Of a stretch of 64,000 nucleotides of DNA, positions 6,390-64,000 are shown in pieces (position 1 is the stretch's first letter; every line of letters starts with the position of its first letter). Below the pieces are notes generated by a model. That model did no database searches and had not been told where the DNA came from. It was given only the letters and a program-made list of their open reading frames with translations. The translations under genes were made by a program, and so were the position numbers. Source of the DNA: Polymyxa betae A26-41 (lineage: Eukaryota > Protista > Endomyxa: Phytomyxea); contig RBZT01000734.1 of NCBI GenBank assembly GCA_003693705.1, positions 1 to 64,000 of the forward strand, in the 5' to 3' direction.

Positions 6390-7490
6390 GATCGGCGACA
6401 TGAGCTGCGGCCTCCCCCATACAGTCGCGTCGGCCAAGTTGCTGATCTTCGCTACGTTATTCACACAGATAGTGACCTTGTCCGGTTCGCGTCGTCATTC
6501 ATCATGCTATCTTTCAAGTATATCTACCGGAACTTGGTCAAGCTGGGCCGGCCCGCCGACCAGGTCCTCCTCGGGCAACCCCAGCTAGAGACCTTGTGCC
6601 AAGTTCCCTTCAGCGACCTGGCACCGCTGACGCAGGTTCGGAGATCGCTGATCACGGTTTATAAATCGGGGCGGACGAGCTCGAAGATGATTGACCATAT
6701 CACTCGAGCTGTATATAAAGAATGGCGGTACAGATCGTCGGAGTATCCTAAGATGAAAGCGCCGCTGCAGACGGCGTGCTCGGCGATCGCATCGGGAGTC
6801 AATTCGACGAATTTGGACGAGATGGTGGCTGTCAACAGCCTCATTGAGACAGTCCATGTTCTAATGGTGAAAATGGGGTTTTTGCCAGAGACCGCTTACC
6901 ATCTCATTGCTGTCCTGATTGTGATCGAGGCGAATCCGCACCAGGTTTTCTCGACCGGGCCCGTGTCGTTGCCGAAATCGCTTGGCATCCGCAACCCATT
7001 GTTTCCGAAAGAAAAGGAAATGAAACCATATCAGATCCATATTGTTGACGATGTTCTTCTCTGCAGCCGGTTTATGGAATCGAACAATGACATCAGGTTA
7101 CGAATGCAGCGGGAATGGGATTTGTTTCGAGCAAGCAATGGCGATTGCGCTGCTGAAATTGAACAGCTTTTGCCGAAGCACAAGGCCAATCCTGCTCTGC
7201 TCAAGGATACGCTGGAGTCGGTGATTGGCAGTCGGCATCTTGCCGAGCTCCCGCCGACCTACAGGCCCTACATACTGGCTCTTTTGCTTCAGTCAGACTT
7301 TGATCAGCAGCCTGTAACTGCTGCGATGGAGACAGCAGGCGAGACTTCGACAGAGATGGCTGTAGATGGCAATGTAGCAGGGCATAGGATTTCAGTTCGG
7401 AAGTGCAAAGCTGTAGAGCAAAGCAAATTCGTCGCGAAACAACTCGCCAGGATTCGTCCGATTGCAAGTCCAAAATTGTGTGTCCCTTAA
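6390..7490 (+). CDS. Hypothetical protein (>=328 aa; 5' end uncertain)
   Basis: Frame is open from 6390 to the stop at 7490. A CTAAC...AG acceptor near 6373-6390 suggests a short upstream exon. No family recognised. Confidence 0.6.
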   Translation, partial: DRRHELRPPPYSRVGQVADLRYVIHTDSDLVRFASSFIMLSFKYIYRNLVKLGRPADQVLLGQPQLETLCQVPFSDLAPLTQVRRSLITVYKSGRTSSKMIDHITRAVYKEWRYRSSEYPKMKAPLQTACSAIASGVNSTNLDEMVAVNSLIETVHVLMVKMGFLPETAYHLIAVLIVIEANPHQVFSTGPVSLPKSLGIRNPLFPKEKEMKPYQIHIVDDVLLCSRFMESNNDIRLRMQREWDLFRASNGDCAAEIEQLLPKHKANPALLKDTLESVIGSRHLAELPPTYRPYILALLLQSDFDQQPVTAAMETAGETSTEMAVDGNVAGHRISVRKCKAVEQSKFVAKQLARIRPIASPKLCVP

Positions 7491-9531: not shown

Positions 9532-14052
<4,521 letters not shown>

Positions 14053-24973: not shown

Positions 24974-26298
24974 CAACCCATACTGGGCAATAACATTAGA
25001 GAAGTGAATTTAAAGCAACTGTTACATACAATATGTTCACTTCCATTGCAGATCTCCCCTACGAGAATCATTGCAATTTCGGCAAAGACATGGGCTACCG
25101 ACTCAAAAGGCACCGGAATAATCTAATTTTTCGAAACTGAGTTAGCCTTAGTTTGATAAAATTTAACAGACCCATGCCCCGCCTGGTAGATCGTGCCACC
25201 ACGGTTTAGCATATGATTTGAATAAATCAATGCGACAAGCAGCCGGTATTCTGGACAAAATTTCTTCCAAATTGTTGAAAACCGACCAAAATTCCTAACT
25301 TCTAATTAAATCAAGCCGATTCATTGAAATATCACTACAGACCAAAATGCTCTTAAATTTAACCAGCTCATAAACGCTTGATGCCTGAATTTGCAATGCC
25401 CATTCGTGGGCGAAATCTTGGCCTTTGCGTTTCGTCATGGCGGTGGTCAGTCGCCAACCATGGGCACAACAGGCACTCGACTACAAGAATAGTCACTACG
25501 ACACCCAACCAAATATTTCGTATTAGGAAATAGAAAGGCCGACTCTATGAATTTGTGAATGTCATGAAGAGGTGACTGTGGGGGATGCCTTCCTAGCCAG
25601 TCATTTCCAATTTTCACAGTGCATGTAACGAAGGCTCTGCTACTGGCCATCTCCTCATTGATTACAGTCTCTTCCATTCGCTGCTTTAGAGCCAGACGTC
25701 ATTCGAAGGCCTGTCATCCTTTCGTTGGCCTAACCAGCTTCGTTGGTACTTCTTGGGTTCAGCACAGCTACGTTGAGCAGCAATTTCGTCGTTTGTTTTG
25801 CTCTTGTTGAGATTTGCTATCATATACATTCCCCTATTGAAGCTCATTTGTAAAAGCAAACTATGAACAGAATAAACAGAGATGACTTTCTCATCATTTG
25901 GTCTCTGATCAATATCAAGCCGCCAGCAATTTGTCGGGTTATTCTATGATTTACTCAAATTACAATCACTCAATTTATAATCAATCTACAATACGAAGAC
26001 GAAATAGATAGGATTTATAGGATAATTAGATATTCGATGACGTGTTGTAAATAGATCGTTCAGGTCTATGCTAGGGTTCAGCGAAATGAGAAATTGTCTT
26101 CGTATACTAATACTATAATATCTTGAACTTAACGTGTGATCGTATCGTCCTGGAGACGAAACGAAGGCGGGGCGAACGTTTCGTTCGCTTCAAGAAATTT
26201 TTAACAAAATATTCAATGCCGCGGAACACGGGATTTTCGGAGTCCGTAAAATTTTAGCAGATTCCCTGAAGAGGTCAAGTAAAGAGTTTGTCATCGAA

Positions 26299-27337
26299 AT
26301 GGGTCGTGTTAATAACAAGAAGCGGTCATGGCGCCGATTGGATGCTAGTGAACCTGAGAAAGCGGCCGAAATGTTTGTTCGATCCGTTGATTTGCCTAAG
26401 CTTAATTTTGTTAACTGATTTCTACAGGGAATCGGCTGCTGATAGTTCCTTATTCATGATCGATGGAGCTGTTCAGCGTTCTATTAACAAATCTGTTCCG
26501 TCTAAAAATACTCTTCAGGCCGCCAAAAAGCTCTTGAGGTGGCATGAAATCACTAAGAAAGACGATATTCGTCCCCAAGTTTATGATCTTTGGGCTGAAG
26601 CTGCCAATAAGGCATCGAAAAATCGTCCAACTGTTTTAGCAAACAGCGATCCGTTACGAACTGGCGTTGTTAGGAGAAATCTGGAGCCCGCTCACCCAGG
26701 GACATCATACAACCCTTCGAAAGAGGACCAGCAAAAAGCGATTGAGATTGCTTATGGAATTCATCTAGAGGAGAACAAAGCTGAAATGATCTGGAGTGAA
26801 AAAGTGGAACAGGCCAGAAAAGCAGTTGTCGGGAACGAAGAAGACGACGAGGAGGCTGACGAAGCTGGCGACACCACAATTATTGTGAAAGCACCCATCC
26901 GAGCCGAGGACCGCTTGACGAAGGCGATAAGAAACAAACGTCGACGCCATAAAATTTTGATGGCTAAGGCTTGCGTCCGAAAGCAACACAAAGCAATTCT
27001 TAGGCAGATTGATACAATTCAAGACCTAGCAATAGTGAAGCCTGGATTAAAGAAATCCACAAAGACATCGCGTTCTATTCAGCTGGGAAAGTACAAAGTC
27101 AAGCCTGAATTTCCAGCTGTTTTGCTTTCAGATGAAATTACCAGCAATTTGAGGGGTGTTGCTTTTCAGCCAACTATCCTTCGTGATACGTTCTTGAGCT
27201 TCCAAAGAAAAGGTAATGCGTTGGTAGTAGTCTATTATATTTCTCAAGTTGTTGCAGGTCTGATTGAAGCAAGACACAAGGTCAAACCAACTCCTGTTCG
27301 TGTCAAGCTATATGACCGATACAAGGATCGTGATTAA
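26299..27337 (+). CDS. NOP53: 60S ribosome biogenesis protein NOP53 (GLTSCR2/PICT1 family)
   Basis: [15 protein letters not shown]..; LFMIDG (AIM-like); [11 protein letters not shown]; [29 protein letters not shown]. Confidence 0.9.
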
Positions 27338-36429: not shown

Positions 36430-38021
36430 TCAAGGAGCATCAGCAGATTCTGATGCAGATGCCCGGGGTGCGACAATCAAAACAGAATGTTGGGCGCCAG
36501 CACCACAAGCCACAACGTCGTTGCCATCTAGTTGCTGTCCTCCGACCTTCTCGAACGTGTTCCTGTCCTCGGCCTGGCCATTACCCAGCTGCAACATTTC
36601 ACCGAACCCGCACGAATACGCCTCCCCTGATCTGGAGACCGCCAACGAATGTGTGCTGCCGCAGGCGATATCGACAATGTTTTCCAATCCAGGAACCACC
36701 GTTGGCACGTTGCGTCCGTCTAGATCGCCCATACCCAGCTAAAACTTGAAATTAACAAACAAACTGCAAAAACAGAAAAACCAATTCCAAGTTGACAAAA
36801 CACGCTCGATAAACAGATACCTCTCCGTAATTATTTCTTCCAAACGAGAGGACATGACCATCTGCAAGCAGAGCCAATGAATGATGAAGACCACCAGCGA
36901 GCTTCACGACATCTCGTCCGCGAACACCAACAACTTCTTCAGGTTTATGCAGCTGCTCTTTCTTCTTGCCATCAATACCCGACTGGCCGTACTGGTTCAT
37001 ACCGAACGCGTACACCTTGCCGGTCGCTGTCACAGCAAAGCTCTGATAGGCACCGGCGAAGATTTTCACCACCTTCCCGATACTACGAACATTGACGAGA
37101 CGTGGCTGTAGCAGGTTCATGCGATGATGGCGGGCGACGCGCTGCCCGATTCGAATATGTCCCCATTCATAGATGTGACCGTTCTCCAATAACACCAGCG
37201 AATGGTTCACACCGGATGCGATATCGATGACCTTCTTTCCCTGCAGGAAGACGGGGATCGGCGTCTCGCATGGCTCGCCAGTATTCGGATTGAATCCCAT
37301 CATGCCATTCGTATCACGATAAGCACCCCAGGTATAAACACGTCCATCCACACCCAGCGCCATCGAATGCGAATCGCCGGCTGTTGCTTTGATGGCAGGG
37401 ACCGGCATGTCGACCTTCCCAGGGATCCATTCGTCGCCGGAACGCCCCAGCGCTTTCTCGTCGTTACAGCCCCAAGACCAGACGTCGCCGTCAGTGGTGA
37501 CGGCGATATTGTGCAGACCGCCGCAAGCGATCGAGACGATGCGATCGTTGAGGTCGACCGGTGTCGGGAACTTCCTCTCGGTGCGATCTTCGGTGAGCCC
37601 TGGCAAGCATGAATGAAGGAGGAAGGCAGCGATAATGAGACAAACCAAGCTGTGCACATTCGCCGGTCCCGAAAACGAGAACACGACCACAACGAGCTCG
37701 TTTTAACGACGATAGGTCGAGGTCGTGCTCCGCCTTGCGCTTCAATGAAAGCGGCTTCATGGCGGCGACCAGGCCCTTCTCAGCGTCAAGAGTCCCATCA
37801 AGCTGATTATCGTCGGATTCCGACGATGATCCCTTCGATGCGTCTACAATGGATTCGTCGTCCTGCGACTGTCGGAGACGACGAGCTGTTTGGGCGAACC
37901 GACCTCTGCGCTTCGGCAATTCTGGAGATGTTGCCTTGACCGAGCCAGCATCGGCAGAATGATCATCGACGGGCTGGTCGGGCTGCTGTTTGGGAGGTCG
38001 ACCCCGACGTTTTGGTGGCAT
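36430..38021 (-). CDS. RCC1: Regulator of chromosome condensation RCC1 (Ran GEF), multi-exon
   Basis: MPPKRRGRPPK N-terminus; VLVFGTGECAQLG; IACGGLHNIAV..VWSWGCNDEKALGR; TAGDSHSMAL..VYTWGAYRD; AGGLHHSLAL; GAGAQHSVLIV. Confidence 0.9.
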
Positions 38022-38488
38022 CTTGGCGCGACAATCGACTTTTTCAACTAAAATTTGAAAAAATCGCGACCAACATGTTCGCGCAAACAATTTTTCGGAA
38101 AATATTTCGACTTCTGTGGTTTTTGTAAATCTTCGGTTGATTCTGTGAGGTCGTATTAGCAGATTCGAATCGACTGCTAATTTCTTATAAATAGTAAGTT
38201 GTATTAGGTCCCCAGGAAAGATTATATCTGGAGTCGGAAATAAACGCCTAATATTTAAGGCAGCACAAATATACGTTCATAAAGAGCTTGGCACTCTGAC
38301 TCATACAAATCAAAACGATTGAATAAAGGTGCCCTTAGACAGACCGTTACAAGTTTTCGAATGAAGTCGTCGCTGGATCGGGGATATTAAGCGCTGATGA
38401 ATATATTGAGAAATGCGCGACGGACTGCGCCGCGGTCCCCAGCGCGCTTCTCCTTCAGCTCGTCACCCTCTCTCTCCATCCGTTAACA

Positions 38489-39677
38489 ATGTCGGCCGCC
38501 GCTCGCCCGCTCGTCTCTGTCTATGGCTCGTCGACGCCGATCGTGATGCCAGCCGTCCTGCTGGCCCCGATCCGTGCTGATCTGGTCCATTCCGTCCACA
38601 CGAACATGGCCAAGAACCACCGCCAGCCATACGCCGTCTCTGGCAAGGCTGGTATGCAACACAGCGCTGAATCCTGGGGAACCGGTCGTGCCGTCTCCCG
38701 AATTCCTCGTGTTAGCGGCAGCGGTACCCACCGAGCCGGCCAGGGTGCTTTCGGTAACATGTGCCGAAAGGGTCGTATGTTCGCCCCGACCAAGACCTAC
38801 CGCCGCTGGCACCGTAAGATCAGCACCGGCCAGCGCCGCTACGCTGTCGCCTCAGCCCTGGCTGCCAGCGCCATCCCGTCTCTGGTCATTGCCCGTGGTC
38901 ACCGCGTCATGCAGATGAAGGAAATCCCGGCCGTTGTCGCCGGTATTGAGTCGGTCAGCAAGACTGCCAAGGCTGTCGAGCTCCTGAAGTCGATCGGCGC
39001 CTATGTCGATGTTGAGAAGTCGAAAGACTCGAAACAGATTCGAACTGGAAAAGGAAAGATGCGTAACCGTCGTTATACTCTTCGTCGTGGTCCTCTCGTT
39101 GTTTATAACAAGGATGAGGGTGTCACCCGTGCCTTCCGTAACCTGCCTGGTGTCGATATCCAGCAGGTCGACCGCCTCAACCTTCTGGAGCTCGCTCCGG
39201 GTGGTCACCTTGGCCGGTTCATCATCTGGTCGGAGGAGGCGTTCAAGCGCCTGGACGATATCTTCGGCACCCAGAAGAAGATGTCCCAGACTCGCTCGAA
39301 CTGGCGCCTGCCTCGCCCGATGGTAATTTTTCAAACTCAGCCTCCTGCAGAACTCTGAATCCCTTGATCAGGTCACTAACACCGACATCAGCCGTATCAT
39401 CAACAGCAGCGAAGTCCAAGCTGTCGTTCGCCCTGTTCAGCGCCAGAAGCGTGTCTGGACCATGAAGAAGAACCCGCTCAAGAACTTGGGCGCCATGGTC
39501 AAGCTGAACCCTTACGCCCTCACCATGAAGCGTAACGAGATCAAGACCTCGAACGCCAACAAAGAGGCCAAGGCCGCTGGTGTCAAGACCGCCGCCCAGA
39601 AGAAGGTCGCCGCTATCAAGAAGAAGAAGGACTCGATCAAGAAGAAGTTCTACAACAATGTCCTCATTGGTGCCTAA
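38489..39677 (+). CDS. RPL4: 60S ribosomal protein L4 (uL4); one intron ~39323-39371
   Basis: [44 protein letters not shown]; [18 protein letters not shown]; [18 protein letters not shown]. Confidence 0.99.
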
Positions 39678-40002: not shown

Positions 40003-43000
40003 TTAGACGACGGTATCGTCGCCATCATGATTGTCCTTTGATTTGCCGACAGCATCGGAACCTTTTTCTGAGCTGTCCTCCCATAAGGGAACAATTTTGT
40101 TCGACAATGCCTGAAGTAATGATGATTTCCGCTTGGGTCTCGTTCCTATCAATTCCCTATTTATGTTGTTATCTGAGCTTGCGGTAGGCGACGTGAGCGC
40201 ATCTGTCGACCCGTTTAGAGATTTCCTGGGTTTCAGCACATTAGGAAACAGTGGAGCTATTATGGGTTTCTCTTCTGTTTCAAAATCGGAGCTCGTCAGC
40301 TGCGATTCCTTCGGCCCTGCTTCATGTGGATCGTGTTGATTCGAATTACGACTACGTTGGTCGCACTCGTCAACTACATCTAAATTCGAGTGTTGGCCCT
40401 TGAATTTCTGGGCCTGTTTGGTCAGCTTTCGTGCCATTCCCGCCACCATAATCGTTGATTTCAGGCTTTTGGAGTCGCTTGAGTCCTTGTCCTAGATAGA
40501 AGTCATCGATGGAATATAAGGAAATTAGCTTGCTGACATCGCTATATTGCTTAGGGAATGGATCACCCTTAACACGAACAAAGTAAGTTGACTCGTTCGG
40601 TATTAATTGACGGCTCTTAGCGAATGCGAACCGAATCGTAGGCTTGTCTGGTTTTTGTAGCAATCGTTTCACATCGGACGAGCAATGTACAAGTTTCTCA
40701 GGACAGGAGAACGCCAGCTGTGCCGCGAGATCAACCTGAACAGGATTAGATATTCATTGAAAACAACAAATGAATCAACTAAGAATGCAACTATCGAAAA
40801 ATAAAAAAGGAGCACAAAAAGAAATGGAAAACTGGAACTTGTGAAACAGATATTTACTGTGATGCCATAAATGCTATGTCGAAGAGATGATCCAGGAAGA
40901 ACAGCAGACAGGACACCCCCAACCGCTACTCCACAAGCGACCGAAAGAATGCCATTGTCCAAGCCAAGCTCGTTCTCGACTTCGGAGCTAGCACGAGCCA
41001 ACTCCAATGCCGCCTGGAACAAATACTCAGAGCTAGCGTGACGAGCTCTGATGCAAATACCTGAACTGCATGGGTGACTCGTGTAATTGGTCCCTGACCA
41101 GGACCAGCTCCTGTTTCATTATCTGGGTCGGATTCGAACTCTTCTTGAGCATGACGGAAACCACAAACGAAAACGTACGATGATCCACCGCTGATTGCAT
41201 TTAGAAAAAGATATTCACAAAGTCACACAATTAACAGAACGATAGGGCAAACGAAGAAAAAAACAAGAAATGATTGGAAGAATGGTGTGAAGTATGAAAC
41301 TTATTATTTACCTCAATAGATTCATGCATGAATGCTGCTGACAGATAGAATTGAACCTTTCAAACAGCTTAGAGATGACCGTTACTGATTCATGTGGTGA
41401 CGATCGATAGCGATTCAGAAAGTCGGACAGGTGAGAGAACTCGATCTGCCCCACAGCGACATTATTGCAGAGCCAGCCTTGAGGTTCGAATGACATGTCA
41501 AGCTTGGCAGCAACAGGGCGCGGAACCAGGCGTGGTAGCAGTCGATGAACAGTACGACGATGCTGATTGCCGGCCCATTCCAGAAAGAACAAACGCCGAA
41601 CATTGACTTCTCGGTCGTAACAGACGATCAACTGGCCAGCTAGTACCAGAGAGAATAGGAGAGCGGCTATCATGGTCTCGGGGAACAGAATCTCGTTTAG
41701 AGCGAATGTATTGATGATAAAAACGACCATGAAGACCAGCCCTAAACCACCAAATTCAGATTGGCAAGAAATTTTAACTCAAGCTATGGTGTGATGGGTT
41801 ATAACGTTGGGACAAAAGACAAATCGGTTCTTGTAAGCAAATAGCCCATCGCTCAAGATGTCGGTGAGTCAAAAGATTCGTACCAATCAGCAAAGAGTCT
41901 GTGTACGCCAGGGCCTGATTCTGTAATGTTGCGGTCACGAACACGATCGCAAGGCAAGTTGTGGACGGATTCGGGACTAAATCGTGGTTTCGCGATGTCA
42001 GCATTGCCTGGATTCCAAAAGTCTGCGACAGGTGAGTTAAAATGATAAAACAATTCTCTGACTAACATTGATTGCTTGTAAGCCCAGCCGGAACAGTAAC
42101 AAAGCTGCAGTACAGTGATGCTGCTCAAGAAAATGATTGAGCCGGCCACTCCAGATCGGCGACTGTATCAGAAAGCTAAGCGCTGAAGAGATGATTAAGT
42201 ACAAAACCACAACAGCGAATCCAGCAGGGTCAAATTGGATTAGAATGAGGTTAAGCAGCTCCCAGACCCCAGCCATGATTGCCTGTCGCGAAGTCAGCAT
42301 CATTGATTATGCCATGAGCACCGAATTACTGGATCGTAACCACGGGTCAGGTTCTGGAGAAGTTTATGCTCTCGAAAGCGTTGGTAGTCGCGCTCGAGCT
42401 CTTCCCTTAGTCGAGTTCAAAAACTGAAAACGTAGATTGCATCTCTTATCGCTAAACTACAAATTTTCAAAAGACACAACTCCACAGATTAAACAAGCGA
42501 AACCTGCGCTTGATAAACACAAATACGAATTAGCTCAAAAGCAACAAAACTACTGACCATGGCACCGATAACCCAGATGTCGTCTGCAGTTCTGCAATAT
42601 CAAACTTTAAAGTACGCGTAAGCGGAACAAGTAATTCAGCAAGATGAGCCTAACAGCGATTAGCCCCGGCCTGATTTGCATCAACTGTAAAACTAACGTC
42701 TTGCTGCTCAACACGGATTCGCCCGCCCAGATGTCTCACATAACTTTTAGCATTGGTGATACGTTCAAGATCATCTCGTTCTTGTTTGATTGAGTTGGTG
42801 AGGTGGTAGAACTGATTACCGTGAAATGATGAGATCTGCAACAATGAGCGATTAGAAGTATTTTCTAAATCCCTCTCGCCTATTGGATGTCAGGATCAGA
42901 GGGCAGTTTAACAAGGGACATTACTTGTCGTGAGAAGGTAAACGTCATTGGAGTTGAGGAATGGAATGGTCGGATCGGAAACATGACAAAGTTTGTTCTT

Positions 43001-46000
43001 TGCGCGAAGGCAATTGCCGAAGTCGAGCGCCTGCTGTACTGTCATGGCCAATCCGGCATCTAGCATGAACGTGACTGCTTCAGATCCCAAGAAAGTTCCC
43101 GAATACTGCCTTCCTATAGAACGATTAGCGCTATGCTCCGAGGGCAAACAGTAGAAAGGTTCCAATCCGATTCAAAAGATGCAATTTGAGAACTAAACCT
43201 GGATTGATGATAATCCCAAAAAAGATAACACATTAGCGGAATCACTTTCGGCAGACCTCGAAATACTCTCGCTTTCAGATCGAGATTGCGGTGTAACCCC
43301 AGAGCTAGAGCATTTATATCAATGCGGTCGGCGGCGCTGAACCGGTACAGGTCGTTGTTATAGGCAAAATTGCGGCATAGACCGAACTCGTTTTGGAGAG
43401 CTGATTTCAGCACAAGATATTGACCGATCTGGATCGCATATTCACGGCTGTCTGTGACATTTTTGGCTAGCAAACAGTCCACAACGTTGATGGCAGTGAA
43501 CGTTTCCGGGTAAGATCGAAATCGGTGTTGGTTCGTCGTGGGATGGAGATTCTTCTTCAGTATATTTATCACATAAGGGACGTCAACATCACGTGAAATC
43601 CGCCACCGGTACAATTCGTCAGGTTCATCGAGAAACTCACGTCCTGATGTCACTGCATGCACAATAACATTACGCATTATTAGAGCATTCGCGATCTTAA
43701 CGCCATCGAATCGGCTCACTACGGTTTGTGATGACATCAACAGGTCAACCACTTCGCTTCCAGAGAAGCAGTTTGGGATTGTGCGAAATAATTGTTTTCG
43801 ATGTTGAACCTGCAGTTTGGACCGGAGTAAGGCTGTAATCGATGAAAACGAATCTACTTGTTCCTGCTGTAATGCAGTTTTTTCTTTATCGCTTGTCATA
43901 GAAGATTTCGACTGCGAGATGGACGTTTTTCGTTTCAGAGTACCCTCGTTCTTCGTCGAAGACGCAATAGGCTCAGCGTGGTACAAATGTCGAACAAGTT
44001 CATACGTGGCCCTTCCGATACAGACTTGGCCTTGATCTGCCAGAGTTTGTGCAATTCGGGCACCATCAATAGCTTCTCCAACAACAGTTGTATAGATCCG
44101 GGGCGGAACGATGTCATCATCTGCGACATCCCAATATGGAATCGGGCCGTGCACTAGCCGTCCTGTGTCAATTCCAATCGAAAGCGTCAACATAACACCG
44201 AACAGCAGCTGTGAAGTACGCGGGTCGCTGAGTTCAGCCAGCCGAATCGCAATGCGGCACATCTCAAGGGCGGAGTCACATTCTGGAGCGGAACCTGGCC
44301 CAATATAGGCCATGAGCAGGGCGCCATGTCCAGATGCTACACAGGAAATTTGCATGTCAGGGCGCGCTGCTGTCCGCCTCAGCGTTGTGGTGATGGTTTC
44401 ATGAATTTTTGACAGTAGGGAGACTGATTGGGCCGGTGATCGATGCTGGATTAGGTTCCCAAGCGAATCGATACCAACGACCAGGCAGGTTGCAGATGAT
44501 GACGACCGACTCGGAACGGAACCCAGAGCGGTATTAACGTAAGATCGAAACGAGGCAATTGACATGCATTGGTCAATTATGCCCAACTTTTCGCTGCGCG
44601 TATTTGAACTGATTTCCGCATTCGGTAACATGTCATCACAAACGGAGCACGATAGTACGAACAAGACACGATACCGACGACATTGAAGAAAATAGAGCCG
44701 ACGTCGACGCTCATCCAAATAGCACTGATATGCAGAAACTACAGCCAGAGAGATGTAAGCGCTGTTCAGCAGGACAATTTCGAGCGGCTGCGGACGAGCA
44801 AATAACGAGGGTGGCAGAGCGAAACAAACATTCATTAATACCAAGTCCCAAATAACTATGACTATGGCATCAGTAAAGTAGAATCGAATTGACGTCAGAA
44901 TCGCATATGGGAAAGCAACAGCGCCGAGCAATGGCATCAAATCCGGTCGAGACATCAGTTCGTTAGCTCTAATGTCAGCACGTCGTGCAAGATCACCGGG
45001 TGTCGGCCATAAAGTCAGGCATTTCAATGCGCTCAATAAAATGCATAGCAAGAAAATGCACTGGCGGGTGGAATCTGGACGGAATCGATCAAGAACCACG
45101 ATTAACAGCGAAAGCCAGGTAATAACAAAAACAGAGCGTGGAGTGCCCCAGGACTGAGCCAGCTCGACCTGGATTAGCGAGTATGCCAACAGAATAATGC
45201 CAACAATTCCTAATCGGAGACGAAGAGAAACCCAATGATTCTTTTCAGAAATATATCGGAACGAACGTTCACGTTCTTCGCATTCGGAGTAGGCACGGCG
45301 CACCTGACCGCTATCCATGTCGGATGATAACGCCGGTGTAAAGCGTAACGTCACAACAGACATGGTAACGGCATAGGATGACAGTTTTTGGTTGTGCTCT
45401 TGTCGAAAATTTGGAATTTTGATCGAAGAACTAAGACTGTCTTTATGTTCTGATGAATACCTGGATGACGACTTCGACATAGAAGGCATACGAAAAAGCA
45501 TAAATGACACTCGCGGCAACATTTTCTGAGATTCCGTCATCGGTGTTGACGCTGTTGTCTGCTGAGCCGAAAAAGAAGAGCGCGACCGCATCACTGAAAG
45601 ACGGCGAACCGATATTCCATCCGGTGTCTGCTCAACAATTGCCGAAGTGTCCGATGGTAACTTCGGCAAAGATTTCGAAAGCGATACCGATCGCGAGCGC
45701 TGTTTGATAACCTCAGGGTCCGCATTCCCAACCTGAGCGGGTTGTAATGAGGTGAGTTTTTTCCAAACATCGCCATTTAGCAGTGCAAACGTGCCATTGA
45801 AGCGATCAGCTTTGGCGCCTGCAACAATCAGCACCTGCTCGACGAAAGGAATTAGCCGTATCCGCAATGTTGTGTACATATCAGAGAATGTAACAGATGC
45901 TGTAATTGCTTTCGACAACAGAAGTTCTGTGCGTGCCTTCTTAACGTAATGCTCGAGGGCCTGTACATTCTCAGCCAGAGTCGGCGATGACAGATAGCGA

Positions 46001-49000
46001 ACGCGACGCAGAGTCATATCTAATACCACAGCGCTGAATGCGATTAGAGCGATGATAAGCGCAAATCGAAACAGGGAAATGCCGTTGTCGACGTCGGGAG
46101 CTAAGGTTGTGTCAATTGCGGAACCGACTTGCACCCAGAAATATGATGCCAGCAGCGAAACCATTGAGAGAAAAATGACGTTCAAGGACGGTGTAGACAT
46201 AGCAGCGATGATTTTTAACACAGCGGTGGCACAGACGACGAAAAACACTAAAATCCCGGAGCTGTACAAGCTCCCAACGTTGTTGTTGTCAACAGCCGAG
46301 GTTGCAACCGAGCTCGTACCTGAGCGAAACCCGAGACTTGCCCATGCATTGATCGATGCCATAGTAAGAAAGAAAACAGCCACACCGTGTACAATTCCGT
46401 TCAGCATGGCACGAAGCGTATGCCCAAGGCCGAATCCGCCGCGACGAGCCCCATTGTGAAAGTACACACGCGGGTCGTTCTCCGCAATGTCATCGCTAAC
46501 ATCTTTATCGCTGATTCCGGTGACAAGGATCGGCAAGAGAGTCAGACCCAAGTCAAACATATCACTGAGAACGGCAGGAACGAAAACAACGGCTGAAAAT
46601 CCATTGAAACAACCATGTAGAAACTGTATCGTTGGGAGCAACATAGTCTTGTAGATTGAGAGCGAAGCGACCTAAGGAGAGAGTTAGTGCTCAAATTGGA
46701 TCAAAGGATATTACACTCAAGAACGTTTCGTTTCATAACATTGAATTGGAGAAATGCAAGAATAACTATTCTAACACTCAAGAAGAGCATTGCGGAAATA
46801 GAGGAAACGATAAGCATCCAAAAAACAAATTTAATAATTTGCTGAACCTGACATAGACGATGATACTGCCAATGGCCATGGACGAGAATTAAGCGAGCAA
46901 GCGTCACAAATTTGGGCATTGAGTAATCGCTGCAAAGGACTGCTTCATTGGCATGCGTCAACGAAACATTTCCAATAGCCACACCAACATGAGCGGCCGC
47001 CATCTGAACGATGTCGCTGGATCCTCGAGCCACAGCCAGAGTCACGATTTCGTCCCGTAGCCCTTCGATGAGGCTATACCAAATAACACACAATGCCCCA
47101 GCCAATAGCCTTCGCAGGATGCTCCAGTGTCGATCTCCAGCTCGGAGCTCACGCCAAGATTCTTTAACCGTATGTCGAGCCTGATCGAGCGGTAAATGCC
47201 GGCCGCGGGTACGAACGAAACGCACAGCGCGAGCTTTGTCGTCTGGTGAACACTGGGCCAGTACGACTGTGTCGGCGACAGCACAGAGGCGAAACAAAAT
47301 ATCAGACATGACAGCATCGCCTGCAATTAGATTGAAAGCGACGGCGTCCAGAGTCAGGGCCATAGGGTTGTCAAGCGCCTGGTTCAAGTACCGCGCATGG
47401 TAATCAAACAATTCCACGCGAAGACGACAGCATGCGGCTTCAAGTTCGGCGTCGACCTACACAGAGGCAACATCAGCATCGGCACCAATCTTAGATCAAT
47501 AGGAATGAAGAGACAAATAGGGAATGGAGTGAACAGGAAATGTAAAGACCAATGTCATGTGGAACACCCGACCTGTTCGGGGGTTGGCTGCGCCGCTGCC
47601 CGTTCAGCCTGAGCACGCTCATAGATCTGATCGAGGGTTGGTGGGGTGAGCCTGGGGTCAACATCGGGGTCGGGCCCTATGGAATCGCCCATATGGAATT
47701 CATTAATAAGCTTCTTGGTGACCTTGGTCGGTGCCAGAGCAGGCGATGACAATAATTGCACCTGGATCATCGCTGGGGTGATGAGTTTCGAGCGGTAAGC
47801 AGTGGCACGAGCTGCTGCTAGCGATTCCGAAGTTGACATCCAGAATTTGATACCGCTGACTTGCATACGCTCTATCATGGTTGGGACGGCGCTATCAACG
47901 ACATCCTCGAAGGCAATCAGACCAACAAACCGCAGTTTAGTCTCAATTTGGTCGGCTAGGAACTGAAGCGTGGCCGTCTGTGGCGTCAGATCCGGGGCCA
48001 ATAACATTTCTCTGGTGATTGGATCGTGATCGGTCCAGTTTATATGGTTGGGATCAAGATTCCGAGCTCGGTAATAAAGCGGCAACCAGATGTTATGGAA
48101 ATAGGTCAGCGGGATTCGACGTTCGGCAATGATCATGGCGCGAAAGCCAGTACGCCCATACCTACAATGGATGGTTTAAATCAGCGGAATACGGTTCTAA
48201 AGAGATTTAGATCACCGGTCCAGGGCGCCGAATACGTCGAATTTCTGCCGGTGTACATCGATGCAACGGTCAATCATGTCACGAGCCCAGCCTTTGCAGT
48301 ACAAAATCATATCGGAACCAGAACGCTTGACGACCACAGACATGCGTCCTCGGCTTGACATAGGATTGATGGCGACGATGTCGACATCTTCCATTACCTT
48401 CTTATGACGTAAGGCTGGCGGCGGCTTCACTGCAACCCGGAGAATTGGACCCTCCCGCGACTTGAACTCCCAACCGAATGCTTTGGCAGCTTCGACCATG
48501 GCAACCTCAAAAGGTGATGATGAACGATACTCAAACGCCTTGTTGAAGAATTTATCGTCGCGTTTGATTGTCGTCTCCAGATGGCGCTGTTCTTTTGCCA
48601 ATTTGATCCGCGAAGTAATCGAATTGCAGCATGCCATAATGGTTGCAACGAGACGGATACGCTTTTGTCGGTCGGCATCATCCTCATTCCACAGGTCCTG
48701 AATGACAGCAGGGCCCTCAGCATCATATTCAATTCCATCACAGTTGATTGTCGCCACTCGAATTGTGCCGGTGGACAATAGACCAAGCTTCTCAGTGAAC
48801 ACGTACTCGACCTGCCCGAGGTCGGCGTTAACATTGCTGGTCATCATGGCAGGCTTATTAAGTAGATTGCTGGTCTGCTCCCAGAGCTTTTTGTCGGAGG
48901 ATACTGAGACGCCTTGCGAAGTCATACAAAGCTCCAATGTAATCCATATCGATATCGATCCAATGGTGCTATACAGAAAGAAGAAATAGGTCCACGATAT

Positions 49001-50566
49001 CAACAAATCAGACGGGTCGCTCAAATACATGTGCCAAAATTGAGTCAGATCAACGTGTCCGGATAGCCCGAGGTCCTGTACGACGATTTCTGAAGCCACC
49101 AGACTCGTTCCTCGCGCGAATAAGCTGTTGCCGGTGGCGCTGAAAAGAGCAAACAGCAGTCGCACACCGAGAATCAAGGCCATGGCCCAATCCAGCTGTT
49201 TCATGAGATGTGATCGTTTCGGTTGGCGACTGGCGCTGCGCCAATTCTTGACGACTTTGCAATCATGCCCGGCGTAAACGACGACGCCGATGGCAGCGCC
49301 GGTGTATGCCAGCCGGGTCCCTCGCATGGCCAAGTTCGATAACGACAGCCTGGCAACGTGCGAGTAGCCGGTGCTGGCTGAATCGTTGCCGAGTTCCTCT
49401 TGCAAAATGCGCTGGACTTTGGGATGCTGTTCGAGCGGCATACCTTTGCAGCGCTCAATCTCCTCGCGCTGCATTTGCGCAGCTGCCTCTCGGATGTCGA
49501 CGCCGAAAATGCCATCGAATGAGGTCAAAGACCGATTCGGCTTATCACACAACAATGCTCCTATGAAGGACATTTAGATTATTCATCCAGGCAACCCCTA
49601 AGCCCTGAGAAAAAATGGCCATAATTAAACAGCAAATGATGCTGAAACAACCTTTAACTCGGCGAAGACATGTTCCTGTTTTGAAGATAGAGGTGACTTC
49701 GACGGCAGTTTTCAGTGACAGATTGGTATCACCGTCCACATTGGACGAATCGATGAAACATTCGCCGTCACATTGACCCTCCAGTGGATCGGTTGCCAGC
49801 AAGACCATATCGGCCGGAAAGCGCTCGCCATTCTTCACCTGAACGATATCGCCGACGACGATATCGCCCCAGGCCATGGATACGAAACTGCTCTTGGTGG
49901 CAACTGCTCGGAGCTGGTTCGGGTCCAGGACCAGACTACGTTTGACATTTTCTTGGGCGTCAGCTCGGGCTCGTTTTAGATCCTCGCTATATTCTTTCAG
50001 CATTCGGATTGCAATCCATAGTGCGAACTCGTAGCGTAGTGGCATGAAGGAGCTCTCATACGAATTTGTATAGACCTGATGACATGGTAAGAAGCTCTGG
50101 AATTAAAAGAGTTTGAAAAGTGCGGCAAATTTTGCACATGGGAGACATCGGATAGAATAACGCAAATAGCAGAGTGGTTTGATGAGTTAAAAGGGGGAGT
50201 GAAACGTAATGCGGCTTAGTTGTGTGACAGAGAGAGAGAGAGAGAGAGAAATTCAATGCTATTCATATTACATTGACGATGATTAGTGCGAGGAAGACCA
50301 GGTTGATGGGCAGCTGAATCTGCTCCCAGAGGCATCGGGGCACGAACGTTGCCAGCGTGTACTTAGCCGTCTGCATCGTGTTCCGCGCGTACCTAAATCA
50401 GCATCTGTTTCAGCTGCCGCTGATGTAGTTTGATTTCGGAATCCCACCCAGCCGCCCCGTTCCGTAGGCGATCATCCAGCATGACGAGACGCCTCTTTTT
50501 CGGATCGTTCGGTTGGGCCAACACTGACTCGTCGAATTTTGGCTTCCGCCGAGCGTTTAGCACCAT
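40003..50566 (-). CDS. P4-ATPase-like / transmembrane nucleotide (guanylyl)-cyclase-like fusion protein with three DEP domains; catalytic motifs degenerate (multi-exon, ~3000 aa)
   Basis: P4 signatures: NTMQTAKYTLATFVPRCLWEQ, WGDIVVGDIVQV..FPADMVLL, LGQVEYVF, SSSPFEVAMVEAA, RMSVVV..LYCKG, LILVHGHWQY. The single 1176-aa ORF 43114..46644 joins the ATPase C-terminal helices to a TM block, a cyclase-fold domain (LSIGIDTG..GQVCIGRATYELV) and DEP domains. A second TM block and cyclase-fold domain follow (VACGVAVGGVLSAVLPG..IYGITVDLAAQL). Confidence 0.85.
50229..50248. repeat. (AG)10 microsatellite inside a ~196-nt intron of the fusion gene
   Basis: Direct reading of the sequence. Confidence 0.9.
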
Positions 50567-50741
50567 TTTCTGTTAGCTCTATCAGTGAATGTTTGTATTT
50601 GCTGATAAAAGTCGGACCTTTTGATAGGCAGATAATCCCGTTTTATGGTCCGTCTCTAAATCAAGAAAGCTGAAGCTGGCCGAGCCGGCTGAATGCTCCT
50701 CCCTGAACAGTCAGCGAGGCGATTGCATCAGAACGAACGTT

Positions 50742-51065
50742 TTACTCGGGCAATATTGTTGCCGCTACTGCATGCTTGGACATATGCGTATGGCCTGCTC
50801 GACTGTCATTCCTGCTGGCAGCTGGCGCTGTGGCACTTGCTGTCGGCCCAGGGACAGCAGGGTGCCCGCTGGATCGGCTGGGGGCATCGACCGGGCCCGT
50901 TGACGAAGTCAGGACGGTTTTGATTCCCTTCTTTCGGGTGCCAAATTGAACAGCGGCGAGTTGCGCCAGCGAATCGGGTTTCTTCTTGGCATTCGAGACG
51001 GCGCGCCGGGGTGGCGACGCCGACACTCGCCGTGCTGTACCGGCGAGGTGAGCGTCATCGGCCAT
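50742..51065 (-). CDS. Hypothetical small basic, low-complexity protein, 107 aa
   Basis: ATG-initiated GC-rich ORF filling the gap between PRMT3 and the fusion gene; no family recognised. Confidence 0.45.
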   Translation of the reverse strand: MADDAHLAGTARRVSASPPRRAVSNAKKKPDSLAQLAAVQFGTRKKGIKTVLTSSTGPVDAPSRSSGHPAVPGPTASATAPAASRNDSRAGHTHMSKHAVAATILPE

Positions 51066-60187: not shown

Positions 60188-60575
60188 CGCCAGGAATGAT
60201 AACGACCACTATCCGCACTATGACAGTTATATAATCGAATATTGCATAATGTGATTTAAACGTTGAGTATATGACAGCTAATACCAAAAGTAATACAAGT
60301 TAATTAGTGAAGCTGCTGAATCTCACCTATTGTACGAAGAATTCCTGGGCTTGCGGTATAAAACAGCAATTTTACTGATAACAACAGACCTTAGTGGGGT
60401 TCTCCAAATTAAATCTGCAGAACGGCAAATGCCAATAAATGTCGTATATCGGATTTACTACAATCACAATAAAAATAAAATTTGGGCCTCTGCTGGTCAG
60501 TCTGCCTTTCGCAGGATAAAACCACTCCAACAGATTTGGTCGCGGACGGCATTTTTGCAGCGACATTTAACTGCG

Positions 60576-61469
60576 ATGTTTAATTGGAGATGGGCGATTT
60601 GTATCGTTCATCTCGTGGCTTTGGCCAGTCCCTTCCCGATGTCATCAGTTAGCTGCTCAAAACCGAAGCCGCAGCTGCTCTCCTACTGCCATCGCTACTC
60701 AGAATCGACCTGCTGTCGCCAGCAGCACGACCAGCAAATTTTACAGAATGTCGCTGGTCTGCACGCCTCATCTGGTGACGAATCATTCTCGGCCGAATGT
60801 ATCGCTTGGACATCCCGCATGGCGTGCTCTGTCTGCGATCCACGAATATCAGGTCCCGACCCAATGTACAGCGACATTTGCCCATCAACATGTCGTTCCT
60901 GGTATGAAGCCTGCCATAAAGATCTATTCACCAATCATATTCGAACTGGACTACTAGCACCATGTAATCCAATGTCGCTGGTTTGTAGCTCACTAAGTGA
61001 TATCTTCAATGACGACCACATCACATTTTGTGCTCGATCCGGGTTTCGCGTCGCCGAAATCGATTCCGATCTGTGTTATCGTGGCGACGAACCGCGATCT
61101 GCTCCAAGATCACCTCGAGCTGAACGTCAACGTCCTCCGCCAACTTTCAATCGATCATGGTTGGGAATCGGCATCGCTCTGGCTTTAATCTTGGTCAAGA
61201 TTCTGGTGACCGGCCAACCTAGGCCTGAGCCAGACCAACCTTTATCTGAAGATGAGATTATAGCCAGGAGGGCGCTCCTTGTTCAGAAATGGGCTGAACG
61301 AAATTCTATCAATTTAACAAATGAGGACGGAACTGAACCAGTGAATCTGGAATCTGAAGTCGTTGCAACGGAACCGGGTTCAGTTTCAGTTGAAAATGAC
61401 CAAGTATCAGATGCTCTGTCCGAACAAAGTATTAATGTACCAAAAGCACCTATTCCATTAAATACATAA
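60576..61469 (+). CDS. Type I membrane protein with folate-receptor-family cysteine-rich domain
   Basis: Signal peptide MFNWRWAICIVHLVALA; YCHRYSESTCC..ECIAWTSRMACSVCDP..ICPSTCRSWYEAC..APC..LVC..FC; TM WLGIGIALALILVKILV; acidic tail. Confidence 0.75.
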   Translation: MFNWRWAICIVHLVALASPFPMSSVSCSKPKPQLLSYCHRYSESTCCRQQHDQQILQNVAGLHASSGDESFSAECIAWTSRMACSVCDPRISGPDPMYSDICPSTCRSWYEACHKDLFTNHIRTGLLAPCNPMSLVCSSLSDIFNDDHITFCARSGFRVAEIDSDLCYRGDEPRSAPRSPRAERQRPPPTFNRSWLGIGIALALILVKILVTGQPRPEPDQPLSEDEIIARRALLVQKWAERNSINLTNEDGTEPVNLESEVVATEPGSVSVENDQVSDALSEQSINVPKAPIPLNT

Positions 61470-61480
61470 TCAGCAGTATT

Positions 61481-64000
61481 TCAAATATTCATTGGGGCCT
61501 CGTTTTCTACGCCGTCGAACTCGCGGCTCAGAGGTCGAGGCCTTTTCAGGCGGCTGATATTGGGCTTGTTTGGGCTGGTTGGGCAAGATGTAGATTTAGA
61601 TGGCCGTTCTGGTTTGGTAGGCGAGCTGTATGGAGGCTGCTTAAGCAAATTCTCCATTCGATTGGAAATCTCGTTCAGAGCGTGGTGGTGAACCTCGCGA
61701 TATCTCAGCTCGGATTCGAACTGCTGCTGGGCATCAATTGCTAACGACACTTGATCTTTGCAGACTTGACTGGTCTCTGAGAAATAATTACAAACGCCCT
61801 GGCGGATAGTTTTCACGTGAGATTCGGTGCTCAGCTGATGAGATTGGGTGCTTTCGAATATAGTCTGAACAGGTGACGACATGGCGGCGGAGCTTGACCT
61901 GATCTCATCGTATCCTGGGCCCAGATAGTTCGTGAATTCGTCTGCAACATCAGCAACCGGTTGGCACGAGGTCGGAATTGTGTTCAGCGATTTCACAAGC
62001 GATGTTAGCGAGGCCTGCGATTCCGTGATGTTCTGCGAGAGGAGTTGCTGTTCTGACCGACGAATGTCGGCATCGGCTGTAGAAGCAGCGCCGACTTTAT
62101 CGCGAATGCCGCTGAACGATTGTATGAGGTTGGAGCTCATAGAATCGATACGAGAATCAATACTGGTGGCATGGGCACCAATCTCTTCAACAAGTTCGGC
62201 AGATCGCGTCTGAACCATTTCGACCAGCTGCTGAACCAGCGAATCGCATTTCTGGCGAACTGATTTTTCTTGCTCGATGAATGACTGAATGAGCGACGTT
62301 CGGAGCTGGCCGACCTGTTGCTCGTGATGGTCCTGCTGAGACTTCATTGTGGCATCCAGCACGCTCCATTGCTGTTCAAGATCAATCGTCTTCTCTTGCA
62401 TCTGAGTCAGCAAAGCCGACGAATTGGTCAAACCACCCTGCAGCGCGTTCTCCATCTCGTTTTGAAACGAATTCAACGAGGTCTGGAATCTCGTCTCCTG
62501 ATCTTCGCAAAAGCGTTTGATGTCAACTTGGAACGAGGACGTCTTTTGTTGGAGATCATCAAGTTTGGCACGAATTCGTTCTAGGTTCTGTGGAAGACCG
62601 TCCTCTTTCGTCACCGACGTCAAGAACGCGAACAGAATCGATAAATCGTTGTTCAAGGTGGAAGCCACGCGGACCATATTGTCCTGCAGACTCTTCGCCG
62701 ACTGGCTGACCGTGCTGGCCCAAGTGCGGGCGTTGTCGACAGCGATTTTGGTCCGGTTCGAGTGCAGTGCCAGAAAATCGTCCAGTGATTTACGGACGTC
62801 AATTATATGGGCGCCGCACGACGAATGGCAGGCGGCGATGGCCTGAGCCTGCTCATGCATGGATTTGTCACGGCGTGAAATGGCCTCTTTGGCCTGGTCG
62901 CGCTCTTGTGTCATAGAGCAAAGCATCTGCGACAGTTGATCACATTTTGTCTGCCAATGATCCTGCTGTCGTGCCATCTCTTCCTGAAGACCATCCACTT
63001 CTTTAGCGTGGTTGTCTTTCATCTGCAGAGCTTCATCGCGTAACCGCTGATTTTTCTCGCTGATTTGATGCAGCTCCTGACGCAGAGATTCCATTTGTTC
63101 GCCCTGGCGTTCCAATGCAGTTTTGCCTTCAGCGAGTTCCCTCTCCATCTGTTCAAACTGCTCCGGAGGCAGAAAGACTCCAGATTTAGTTCGTTGAGCC
63201 TCCAGCTGCTTCTTAATGAGGCTCATATTCACCTGAAGGTCTCGAACGAAGGCTTTTTGAGTGACCCTGCAGTAGCTGTAAGACATGAGACCTCCCGTCG
63301 TTCTGTTCTTACTTTTGATTAACTTCGGGTCGATTGAGAATGTTCTTGGCCGTGTGAGCATATTCGAGCGTTTTCAGTGTTTCTTCGAGGCCTCGTTGCG
63401 ATGGAGAGATAGTCGCGATTAGAATGGTTTTTGCCTTTCCTCCAAGTGACTCTTGCAGCAATCGTGTCAGTTTACTTTCACGATATGGGATATGGCGTTG
63501 GCCTTGAACGAGGGAATTGATCACACGACCCAACGTTAGCAGTGACCGATTGATGTTTCCAGCTTCTTTGGCGCGCTGTCCAACAGCTTCGGATTTGCCG
63601 ACACATTCGGATCCAGCCAGATCGACCAGATTTAGCTTTCCGATCTTGATGATACTTTCGCCATCAACTGTCGTCTCTTTCGTGTGAACTTTGACAGTAA
63701 AAATTGTATGAGATCGAGACGACGCCGCATCTACCAGACATTCAGACGAGGGTAATGAAAGTGCAGGAATACTGAACTCATTTTGGTTTCAGCAGTTTTA
63801 CGCCGATCCCAGCAACGGGTCAGTACGGTAAAAATATCAGTTGGGTCGACAACCAGAACCTTGAAAAGACAAATTCAGGGCAGCATTCAAGAGAAAAAAT
63901 CTTCGTATCACCTCCTCTAAATTTGACACGAAAACGCCTTTCACGAGATCGTCAAAGATGCGGAGGTCGCCCTCATTAGAATCGGTCAACAGATCCAAAA
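61481..64000 (-). CDS. KIF11: Kinesin-5 (BimC/Eg5 family), 5' part outside the window
   Basis: SSRSHTIF; [11 protein letters not shown]; [12 protein letters not shown]; [23 protein letters not shown]; NRPEVNQK neck; RTKSGVFL; long coiled-coil stalk. Confidence 0.93.

What the first reader, a model, noticed from the sequence alone, without database searches (positions are those of the whole stretch)
40003..50566. Flippase-cyclase chimera with DEP domains: a probable non-catalytic, roughly 22-TM signalling scaffold
Seen: the domain order is P4-ATPase-like module, TM block, cyclase fold 1 (~44495-43980), three DEP domains, TM block, cyclase fold 2 (~41460-40670), disordered tail. The ATPase-to-cyclase-to-DEP junctions lie inside one uninterrupted 1176-codon ORF, so the fusion is not a gene-model artefact. 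Known: P4-ATPase/guanylyl-cyclase chimeras control egress and motility in alveolates (Plasmodium GCalpha/GCbeta, Toxoplasma GC, ciliate GCs) and work with CDC50 subunits; I know no characterised member with DEP domains. Inference: this is a derived member, in a lineage that does not look alveolate, that kept the architecture, lost both chemistries and gained receptor/membrane-targeting modules. It could be a lipid- or GPCR-coupled sensor or scaffold.
Basis: partly seen in the sequence, partly recalled or inferred. Interest (0 to 1): 0.92.

Follow-up and report, generated by a model that had tools for sequence, protein, structure and literature searches.

The report
Doubly dead flippase-cyclase with DEP domains
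A plant-root parasite keeps a giant membrane protein descended from the flippase/cGMP-cyclase fusion that drives malaria-parasite motility, but with both enzyme halves lacking their catalytic residues and three membrane-targeting domains inserted, in a lineage reported to lack this fusion.

Summary
Real. The genome matches Polymyxa betae (Rhizaria) by assembly size. Ten introns, including the one joining the ATPase core to the 1176-codon ORF, are spliced in cDNA contigs. A full-length orthologue (47% identity) and partial ones keep the architecture under purifying selection. Flippase, C1 and C2 each group with the alveolate/oomycete P4-guanylyl cyclase (P4GC). DKTGT, DGET, PISL, TGD, GDGAND, both cyclase metal aspartates and the Asn/Arg pair are replaced. 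None of 33 other chimeras retrieved has DEP. A 2026 survey reports no P4GC in rhizarians and an always-conserved cyclase; this contradicts both. Best reading: a non-catalytic membrane scaffold; its partners are inferred, not shown. By-catch: P4GC-type chimeras in Diphylleia, Rhodelphis and a haptophyte, and a separate adenylyl-type chimera in Euglenozoa. The scan had noted this only on the same stretch.

The parts
40003..51065 (-). Whole gene: 20 exons, 3115 aa, pseudo-flippase / pseudo-cyclase / 3x DEP chimera
   Evidence: Spliced model has no internal stop and all introns are GT-AG; 10 introns supported by cDNA contigs; full-length orthologue L003 at 47% identity
50618..51065 (-).
   Evidence: In-frame splicing; two segments conserved in L003; not covered by reads
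49214..50449 (-). P4 N-terminal segment, TM1-2 and actuator domain; DGET replaced by DGDT (aa 337, position 49736)
   Evidence: E1-E2_ATPase hit; motif table; 67% identical to L003, among the most conserved parts
48854..49213 (-). TM3-4; the PISL kink is replaced by SISI (EVSV in L003)
46854..48853 (-). P and N domains; phosphorylation motif DKTGT replaced by EKLGL (48793; EKNGL in L003); KGA, TGD and GDGAND also replaced; two insertions, one hydrophobic (aa about 1121-1139)
46672..46847 (-). 176-nt intron joining the ATPase core to the large exon
   Evidence: Joint seen in contigs of runs X1, X3, X5 with 155 nt on the short side
45973..46853 (-). Flippase TM5-10 (PhoLip_ATPase_C)
   Evidence: PF16212, E 5.7e-23
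45388..45972 (-). Ser/Arg-rich linker between flippase and cyclase modules
   Evidence: Sequence; 40% identity to L003
44503..45387 (-). Cyclase membrane block M1 (6 TM, preceded by a TLRF motif), helical domain and CTE1
   Evidence: Six hydropathy peaks; alignment to P4GC first modules
43972..44502 (-). Pseudo-cyclase C1, P4GC-C1 type: Asp1 to Gly, guanine-specifying Glu lost, Asn/Arg to Asp/Ile
43588..43845 (-). DEP domain 1
   Evidence: PF00610, 63.2 bits; PDB hits DEPTOR and P-Rex1
43330..43587 (-). DEP domain 2
   Evidence: 31.1 bits, just under cut-off; similar to DEP1, E 1e-8
42929..43329 (-). DEP domain 3, split by intron 43256-43114
   Evidence: 34.6 bits; intron spliced in four runs
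41473..42571 (-). Cyclase membrane block M2 (6 TM by homology; a TLKF motif lies just upstream at 42613), helical domain and CTE2
40652..41472 (-). Pseudo-cyclase C2, P4GC-C2 type: metal Asp1 to Glu, Asp2 to Ser (Gly in L003), phosphate-binding Arg lost
40003..40651 (-). Low-complexity C-terminal tail
   Evidence: Aligns to the stop in L004 at 40% identity; last two introns inferred

Best explanation
A catalytically dead descendant of the P4-ATPase/guanylyl-cyclase chimera (pseudo-P4GC), kept by plasmodiophorids as a membrane signalling scaffold. Shown: one conserved reading frame; homology of all three modules to P4GC; replacement of every canonical catalytic residue; three DEP domains in the C1b loop; strong purifying selection. 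Inferred: (1) the flippase-shaped half binds a CDC50 subunit, which gets the protein out of the ER and fixes it in a particular membrane patch, as for Plasmodium GC-beta and Toxoplasma GC; (2) C1 and C2 still dimerise on their helical stalk and serve as a docking surface rather than an active site; (3) the cytosolic DEP triplet binds anionic lipid or partner proteins and clusters G-protein and cyclic-nucleotide components, most plausibly in the flagellate zoospore. Lipid flipping is left to seven intact P4-ATPases (two from the same P4GC clade, without a cyclase), and nucleotide cyclisation to other cyclases.
For: Splicing and single frame. Orthologues L003 (47% over about 3000 aa), L004 (69%, syntenic with RPL4), P0004, and distant L005/L006 carrying the C1-DEP and flippase-M1 junctions. 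Synonymous sites near saturation while C1, C2 and helical/CTE regions are 80-85% identical to L004. Motif loss shared by two to three species. C1 scores 61 bits on the P4GC-C1 profile and at most 8 on other groups; C2 scores 81 on P4GC-C2. Flippase tree: inside a 96-99 SH-aLRT clade holding all sampled P4GCs; union with the euglenozoan type rejected, p-AU 0.023. Cyclase tree: C1 among P4GC C1s and C2 among P4GC C2s, split from adenylyl types at 95. The genome has four CDC50 loci, at least eight G-alpha loci, seven intact P4-ATPases, and no intact P4GC-type cyclase was found. CDC50-dependent localisation and a non-transport role of the flippase half are described in PMC13466520.
Against: No biochemical, localisation or interaction data. 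Partners (CDC50, G-alpha, GPCR, lipid) are inferred from families only. The branches are very long (2.2-3.0 changes per site), only quick trees finished, and the position inside the P4GC clade is unresolved: sisterhood with the P. betae intact paralogues plus P0244 is rejected (p-AU 0.025) and sisterhood with an oomycete is not (0.19). Structure prediction was low-confidence and gave no significant fold match. No single contig spans the whole mRNA, and the 3' half has 1.2-3 times higher contig depth. Only 16 of 22 TM helices stand out by hydropathy.
Confidence: 0.6

Rival explanations
1. Allosteric sensor rather than static scaffold: the C1/C2 cleft still binds a nucleotide or small ligand, or has low non-canonical cyclase activity, and transmits this through the helical domain to the DEP domains or the flippase half.
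For: C2 keeps an acidic residue (Glu) at the first metal position in both full-length orthologues. The helical domain, CTE, C1 and C2 are among the most conserved parts.
Against: The second metal Asp, the phosphate-binding Arg, the Asn/Arg pair and the base-specifying Glu are all missing, with different replacements in different orthologues.
Confidence: 0.15
2. Trans-regulator of active cyclases: the dead cyclase domains pair with, or act as a G-alpha decoy for, active or half-site cyclases encoded elsewhere in the genome.
For: The genome holds several intact soluble-type and fungal-type adenylyl cyclases and many G-alpha genes. Unchecked scan notes mention half-site cyclases (s1-673921).
Against: Neither C1 nor C2 supplies a complete catalytic half, so complementation is unlikely. 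Both helical/CTE stalks are conserved, which favours intramolecular pairing.
Confidence: 0.13
3. The main function lies in the membrane part: an ATP-independent lipid scramblase, channel or lipid sensor built from the uncoupled flippase, with the cyclase and DEP parts as regulators.
For: The actuator domain is highly conserved (67% to L003). Lipid sensing by the flippase half has been proposed for P4GC (PMC13466520).
Against: The TM4 PISL kink and TM1/TM5/TM6 polar motifs are altered, and the TM segments are among the less conserved parts (44-45%).
Confidence: 0.08
4. Origin rival: the gene came by horizontal transfer from an oomycete, or by re-fusion of P4GC-derived parts, rather than by vertical inheritance.
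For: Sisterhood with Aphanomyces is not rejected (p-AU 0.19). The 2026 survey found no P4GC in two rhizarian genomes.
Against: No free tree groups it with oomycetes. P. betae has two intact flippases from the P4GC clade. Their sister P0244 is an intact P4GC on a contig whose neighbour best matches Paulinella. P4GC-type chimeras also occur in Diphylleia, Rhodelphis and Diacronema, so the family predates SAR.
Confidence: 0.15
5. Gene-model artefact or decaying pseudogene.
Against: Spliced contigs tile 47000-41000 in frame, the architecture is the same in L003, and dN is far below dS in all domains.
Confidence: 0.02

Closest known systems
P4GC: P4-ATPase/guanylyl cyclase chimera of alveolates, oomycetes and bicosoecids (Plasmodium GC-alpha/GC-beta, Toxoplasma GC, ciliate GCs; PMC13466520)
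   Same: Flippase module, then 6TM-C1-C1b-6TM-C2; C1 and C2 match the P4GC positions; all three modules fall in P4GC clades.
   Different: Cyclase catalytic residues are absent (the survey finds them conserved in all lineages); all ATPase motifs are lost together; three DEP domains sit in C1b; the host is a rhizarian.
Plasmodium GC-beta, Cryptosporidium, gregarine and Tetrahymena P4GCs (degenerate flippase half)
   Same: Altered DKTGT, DGET and PISL motifs; flippase half probably acts in targeting or structure.
   Different: Those keep a conserved cyclase module; here the cyclase is degenerate too.
P4-ATPase/adenylyl-type cyclase chimeras of Euglenozoa and Colponema (retrieved here: P0170-P0173, P0237, P0238, P0243)
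   Same: Same overall domain order.
   Different: Mammalian C1/C2 order with adenylyl-type residues; separate flippase clade; grouping with this gene rejected; no DEP.
Mammalian class IIIa adenylyl cyclases (C1b as regulatory loop; own knowledge)
   Same: 12-TM pseudo-heterodimer with helical domain and CTE; regulatory input placed in C1b.
   Different: No flippase, no DEP, catalytically active.
Tandem-DEP proteins (DEPTOR, P-Rex1/2)
   Same: Best solved-structure sequence matches for DEP1-DEP2.
   Different: Soluble proteins; here the DEPs lie in a loop of a roughly 22-TM protein.

Membership tests
P4GC chimera | P4-ATPase module and two-cyclase module in one polypeptide | tested here: met
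P4GC chimera | C1 and C2 of the inverted (P4GC) type, position by position | tested here: met
   Group HMMs and hhalign; cyclase tree
P4GC chimera | Flippase module belongs to the P4GC flippase clade | tested here: met
   SH-aLRT 96-99 in three quick trees; long branch, inner position unresolved
P4GC chimera | 10+6+6 transmembrane helices | tested here: inconclusive
   16 of 22 by hydropathy, the rest by alignment; no topology predictor available
P4GC chimera | Conserved cyclase active site (two metal Asp in C2; Glu, Asn, Arg in C1) | tested here: not met
   therefore filed as a dead descendant, not as a functional P4GC
P4GC chimera | Guanylyl cyclase activity | not testable with these tools
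   Needs an enzyme assay
P4GC chimera | Association with a CDC50 subunit (and UGO in apicomplexans) | not testable with these tools
   Four CDC50 loci exist; binding untested; UGO not searched
P4-ATPase (active flippase) | DKTGT phospho-Asp, DGET, PISL, TGD, GDGAND | tested here: not met
   All replaced in P. betae and L003; P-domain motifs also in P0004
Euglenozoan/Colponema P4-adenylyl cyclase chimera | Shared flippase clade and mammalian C1/C2 order | tested here: not met
   p-AU 0.023; HMM scores
DEP domain (PF00610) | Profile match at curated cut-off | tested here: met
   DEP1 and DEP3 over cut-off; DEP2 at 31.1 against 32.7 bits but homologous to DEP1
DEP domain (PF00610) | Binding of anionic lipid or receptor tails | not testable with these tools
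   All three are mildly basic; binding untested

The most novel reading that the evidence does not exclude
The flippase-cyclase fusion is an ancient eukaryotic module (P4GC type in SAR including Rhizaria, haptophytes, Rhodelphis and Diphylleia; a second, adenylyl-type fusion in Euglenozoa) whose core role is structural: relaying membrane-lipid state across the bilayer-embedded chain. Plasmodiophorids dropped both chemistries and rewired the output from cGMP synthesis to DEP-mediated recruitment of G-protein and cyclic-nucleotide effectors, giving an enzyme-free lipid-sensing receptor.
Probability: 0.2. Interest if true: 0.9.

Novelty: new variant of a known kind. Interest (0 to 1): 0.78.

Why it matters
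It contradicts two conclusions of a dedicated 2026 survey of this family (PMC13466520): that rhizarians lack the fusion, which dated it after their divergence, and that the cyclase half is always conserved. The survey's requirement for recognisable cyclase domains would miss this gene. It is a natural experiment on the open question of why a flippase is fused to a cyclase: the whole architecture is kept under selection without either active site, so the fusion has a non-enzymatic job that can be isolated. It also gives a candidate signalling hub for zoospores of plasmodiophorid crop parasites and virus vectors. The by-catch pushes the origin of such chimeras far deeper than SAR and suggests two separate fusions.

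Tried and rejected
The joined spliced protein was not sent to any database search; searches went exon by exon by reference, and the joined model was used only in local scripts. By eye the cyclase domains looked closer to the euglenozoan adenylyl type; profile scores, trees and an AU test rejected this. AlphaFold models of C1 (pLDDT 41.6) and of the DEP region (36.1) were too poor; Foldseek and VIA gave only weak GGDEF/cyclase-like rows, not used as support. Two metagenome scans found no further orthologues. Rfam found nothing in the window. Careful (bootstrap) trees did not finish. No cyclase was found 4-5 kb downstream of the two closest intact flippases. Literature searches found no description of this architecture; most subscription journals are not covered. 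The species of L003, L004 and P0004 are not given by the tools; L003 is guessed to be Plasmodiophora from its 64% GC only.
Full report
Organism. The window lies on a eukaryotic assembly of 27,085,814 bp in 1001 contigs. The published Polymyxa betae draft has 1,001 contigs, 27,085,946 bp and 45.1% GC (PMC6328671). I take the source to be P. betae (Plasmodiophorida, Phytomyxea, Rhizaria) on that match; no marker gene was classified.

Gene structure. Open frames on the minus strand join through 19 GT-AG introns of 43-176 nt into a 3115-codon frame from 51065 to 40003 without an internal stop. Contigs from four public runs (three samples, two studies) laid on 41001-47000 skip nine of these introns exactly, and their loose end at 41060 matches the next exon, supporting a tenth. 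These include the 176-nt intron that links the ATPase core to the large exon, and all the small exons at 42300-42900. One contig runs from the first cyclase TM block through C1, the three DEPs, the second TM block and into C2; others cross from the ATPase core into the large exon. No contig spans everything, but the breaks fall inside the uninterrupted 1176-codon ORF. Contig depth is higher in the 3' half, which may be 3' bias or a shorter transcript. The joined protein was used only in local scripts; database searches went exon by exon.

Domains. Pfam gives PhoLip_ATPase_C, E1-E2_ATPase, Cation_ATPase and DEP; the cyclase hits are sub-threshold exon by exon. A profile built from retrieved cyclases finds C2 at 69 bits. 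P4GC-specific profiles find the first module at 61 bits and the second at 81, against 7.2 for the best of 400 shuffles. ESM Atlas features independently return PF00211 for both halves. Each TM block is preceded by the TLxF motif seen in other chimeras. The three DEPs lie in the C1b loop. Sixteen of the expected 22 TM helices show by hydropathy; the rest follow from alignment. Structure prediction was uninformative.

Both active sites lack their catalytic residues. In the flippase half, DGET reads DGDT, PISL reads SISI, DKTGT reads EKLGL, and the KGA, TGD and GDGAND motifs are replaced; L003 and P0004 show equivalent losses. In intact P4GCs, C2 carries the two metal aspartates and C1 the base-specifying Glu and the Asn/Arg pair. 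Here C2 has Glu and Ser at the metal positions and lacks the phosphate-binding Arg. C1 has lost the Glu and has Asp and Ile for Asn and Arg. Loss of activity is an inference from established P-type ATPase and class III cyclase chemistry; it was not assayed.

Conservation. A profile search of 1.84 billion representatives found only fragments as close relatives. Their contigs give a full-length orthologue (L003, 64% GC, 47% identity over about 3000 aa, many shared intron positions) and a C-terminal half (L004, 69%, syntenic with RPL4). Two short distant contigs from one sample carry the C1-DEP and flippase-M1 junctions. Synonymous sites are near saturation while C1, C2 and the helical/CTE segments are 80-85% identical to L004 and the actuator domain 67% to L003. 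This is a maintained pseudoenzyme, not a decaying gene.

Ancestry. Two searches retrieved 33 flippase-cyclase chimeras. They split into an inverted, guanylyl type (Blepharisma, Chromera, Pythium, Aphanomyces, but also Diphylleia, Rhodelphis and Diacronema) and an adenylyl type with mammalian order (Entosiphon, Euglena, Neobodo, Apiculatamorpha, Colponema). The plasmodiophorid C1 matches guanylyl-type C1 and its C2 matches guanylyl-type C2, and both fall there in a tree. The flippase falls in a 96-99 SH-aLRT clade holding all guanylyl-type chimeras plus a few cyclase-less flippases. Grouping with the adenylyl type is rejected (p-AU 0.023). The branch is long and only quick trees finished, so the position inside the clade is open: union with the other P. 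betae members is rejected (0.025) and union with an oomycete is not (0.19). Two intact, cyclase-less P. betae flippases (contigs C482, C990) also nest in this clade, sister to an intact environmental P4GC (P0244). A neighbouring gene of P0244 has Paulinella as best named match. That favours vertical inheritance with duplication and division of labour over transfer, without proving it. None of the 33 chimeras has a DEP domain.

Genomic context. The genome has seven other P4-ATPases, all with DKTGT, four CDC50 loci, at least eight G-alpha loci, and three soluble-type and two fungal-type adenylyl cyclase loci (lower bounds). No intact P4GC-type cyclase was found with three queries. A kinase with three cyclic-nucleotide-binding domains has Ala, not Thr, after the pocket Arg in the two canonical pockets, which by my own knowledge favours cAMP. 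The only other DEP locus found lies beside cyclic-nucleotide-binding domains on C818. GPCR signalling has been reported to matter in the relative P. brassicae (PMC9180986).

Mechanism. Most likely (0.6 overall; about 0.85 for ancestry and dead state, about 0.5 for the role) the protein is a non-catalytic scaffold. The flippase-shaped half with a CDC50 subunit places it in a membrane patch, C1/C2 form a docking surface, and the DEP triplet recruits lipid or protein partners of G-protein and cyclic-nucleotide signalling, plausibly in zoospores. Every step after the anatomy is inferred. Rivals are an allosteric nucleotide sensor, a trans-regulator of other cyclases, and an ATP-independent lipid transporter or sensor.

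Comparison and novelty. A 2026 survey (PMC13466520) found P4GC only in alveolates, oomycetes and bicosoecids. It found none in rhizarians after searching P. brassicae and Reticulomyxa, and describes the cyclase half as highly conserved in all lineages. Degenerate flippase halves are known; I found no described member with a degenerate cyclase, with both halves degenerate, or with DEP domains in the papers I could search. The gene fails the active-site criterion, so I file it as a dead descendant of P4GC: a new variant of a known kind. Interest 0.78.

Noticed in passing
P0171, P0172, P0173, P0237, P0238, P0243, P0170 and environmental P0147, P0169, P0236, P0239-P0242: A second family of P4-ATPase/cyclase chimeras with adenylyl-type residues and mammalian C1/C2 order in euglenids, kinetoplastids and Colponema; own flippase clade (96-98 support). 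Not in the 2026 survey. The Colponema transcript could be prey contamination.
   Followed up: partly
P0245 (Diphylleia), P0246 and P0257 (Rhodelphis), P0270 (Diacronema): P4GC-type chimeras outside SAR; P0257 has an intact flippase but a degenerate cyclase pair.
   Followed up: partly
L065:1945-8946 (P0244): Fully intact, intronless P4GC on an environmental contig whose Pol-epsilon-B neighbour best matches Paulinella among named hits (330 vs 293 bits); probably a rhizarian with an active P4GC.
   Followed up: partly
L067:62-6418 (P0282): Permuted chimera: the two-cyclase module lies N-terminal to the flippase.
   Followed up: no
L046 (C482) and L050 (C990): Two intact P. betae flippases nested in the P4GC clade with no cyclase downstream; possible fission products.
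   Followed up: partly
L053/L063 (C505:10368-14512): PKG-like kinase with three cNMP domains and an N-terminal MG-x-x-C acylation-type start, but Ala instead of Thr in the pockets (cAMP-type).
   Followed up: partly
L043:2061-5609 and 1-1953 (C941): Soluble-type adenylyl cyclase with a P-loop domain directly upstream of a PH-PH-phosphodiesterase frame on the same strand; possible fusion.
   Followed up: no
P0286; P0172; P0275: P0286 is a P4-ATPase carrying a CDC50 domain in the same chain; P0172 has C-terminal MORN repeats; P0275 carries an extra PF00884 domain.
   Followed up: no
window:47070-47190: Conserved roughly 50-aa insertion with a hydrophobic helix inside the P domain, present in L003 and P0004.
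   Followed up: no
window:41443: G>A difference in runs X3 and X5 (one sample), a probable strain variant in C2.
   Followed up: no
window:51154-52188, 38339-39581, 36755-37690, 26288-27334, 10576-12588, 60333-61469: Ordinary neighbours: protein arginine methyltransferase (ends about 85 bp before the proposed start), RPL4, RCC1-like, Nop53, SNF2 helicase and a folate-receptor-like protein.
   Followed up: partly
window:34524-35711, 61484-63361, 6504-7487: Long ORFs (396, 626, 328 aa) with no Pfam match.
   Followed up: no
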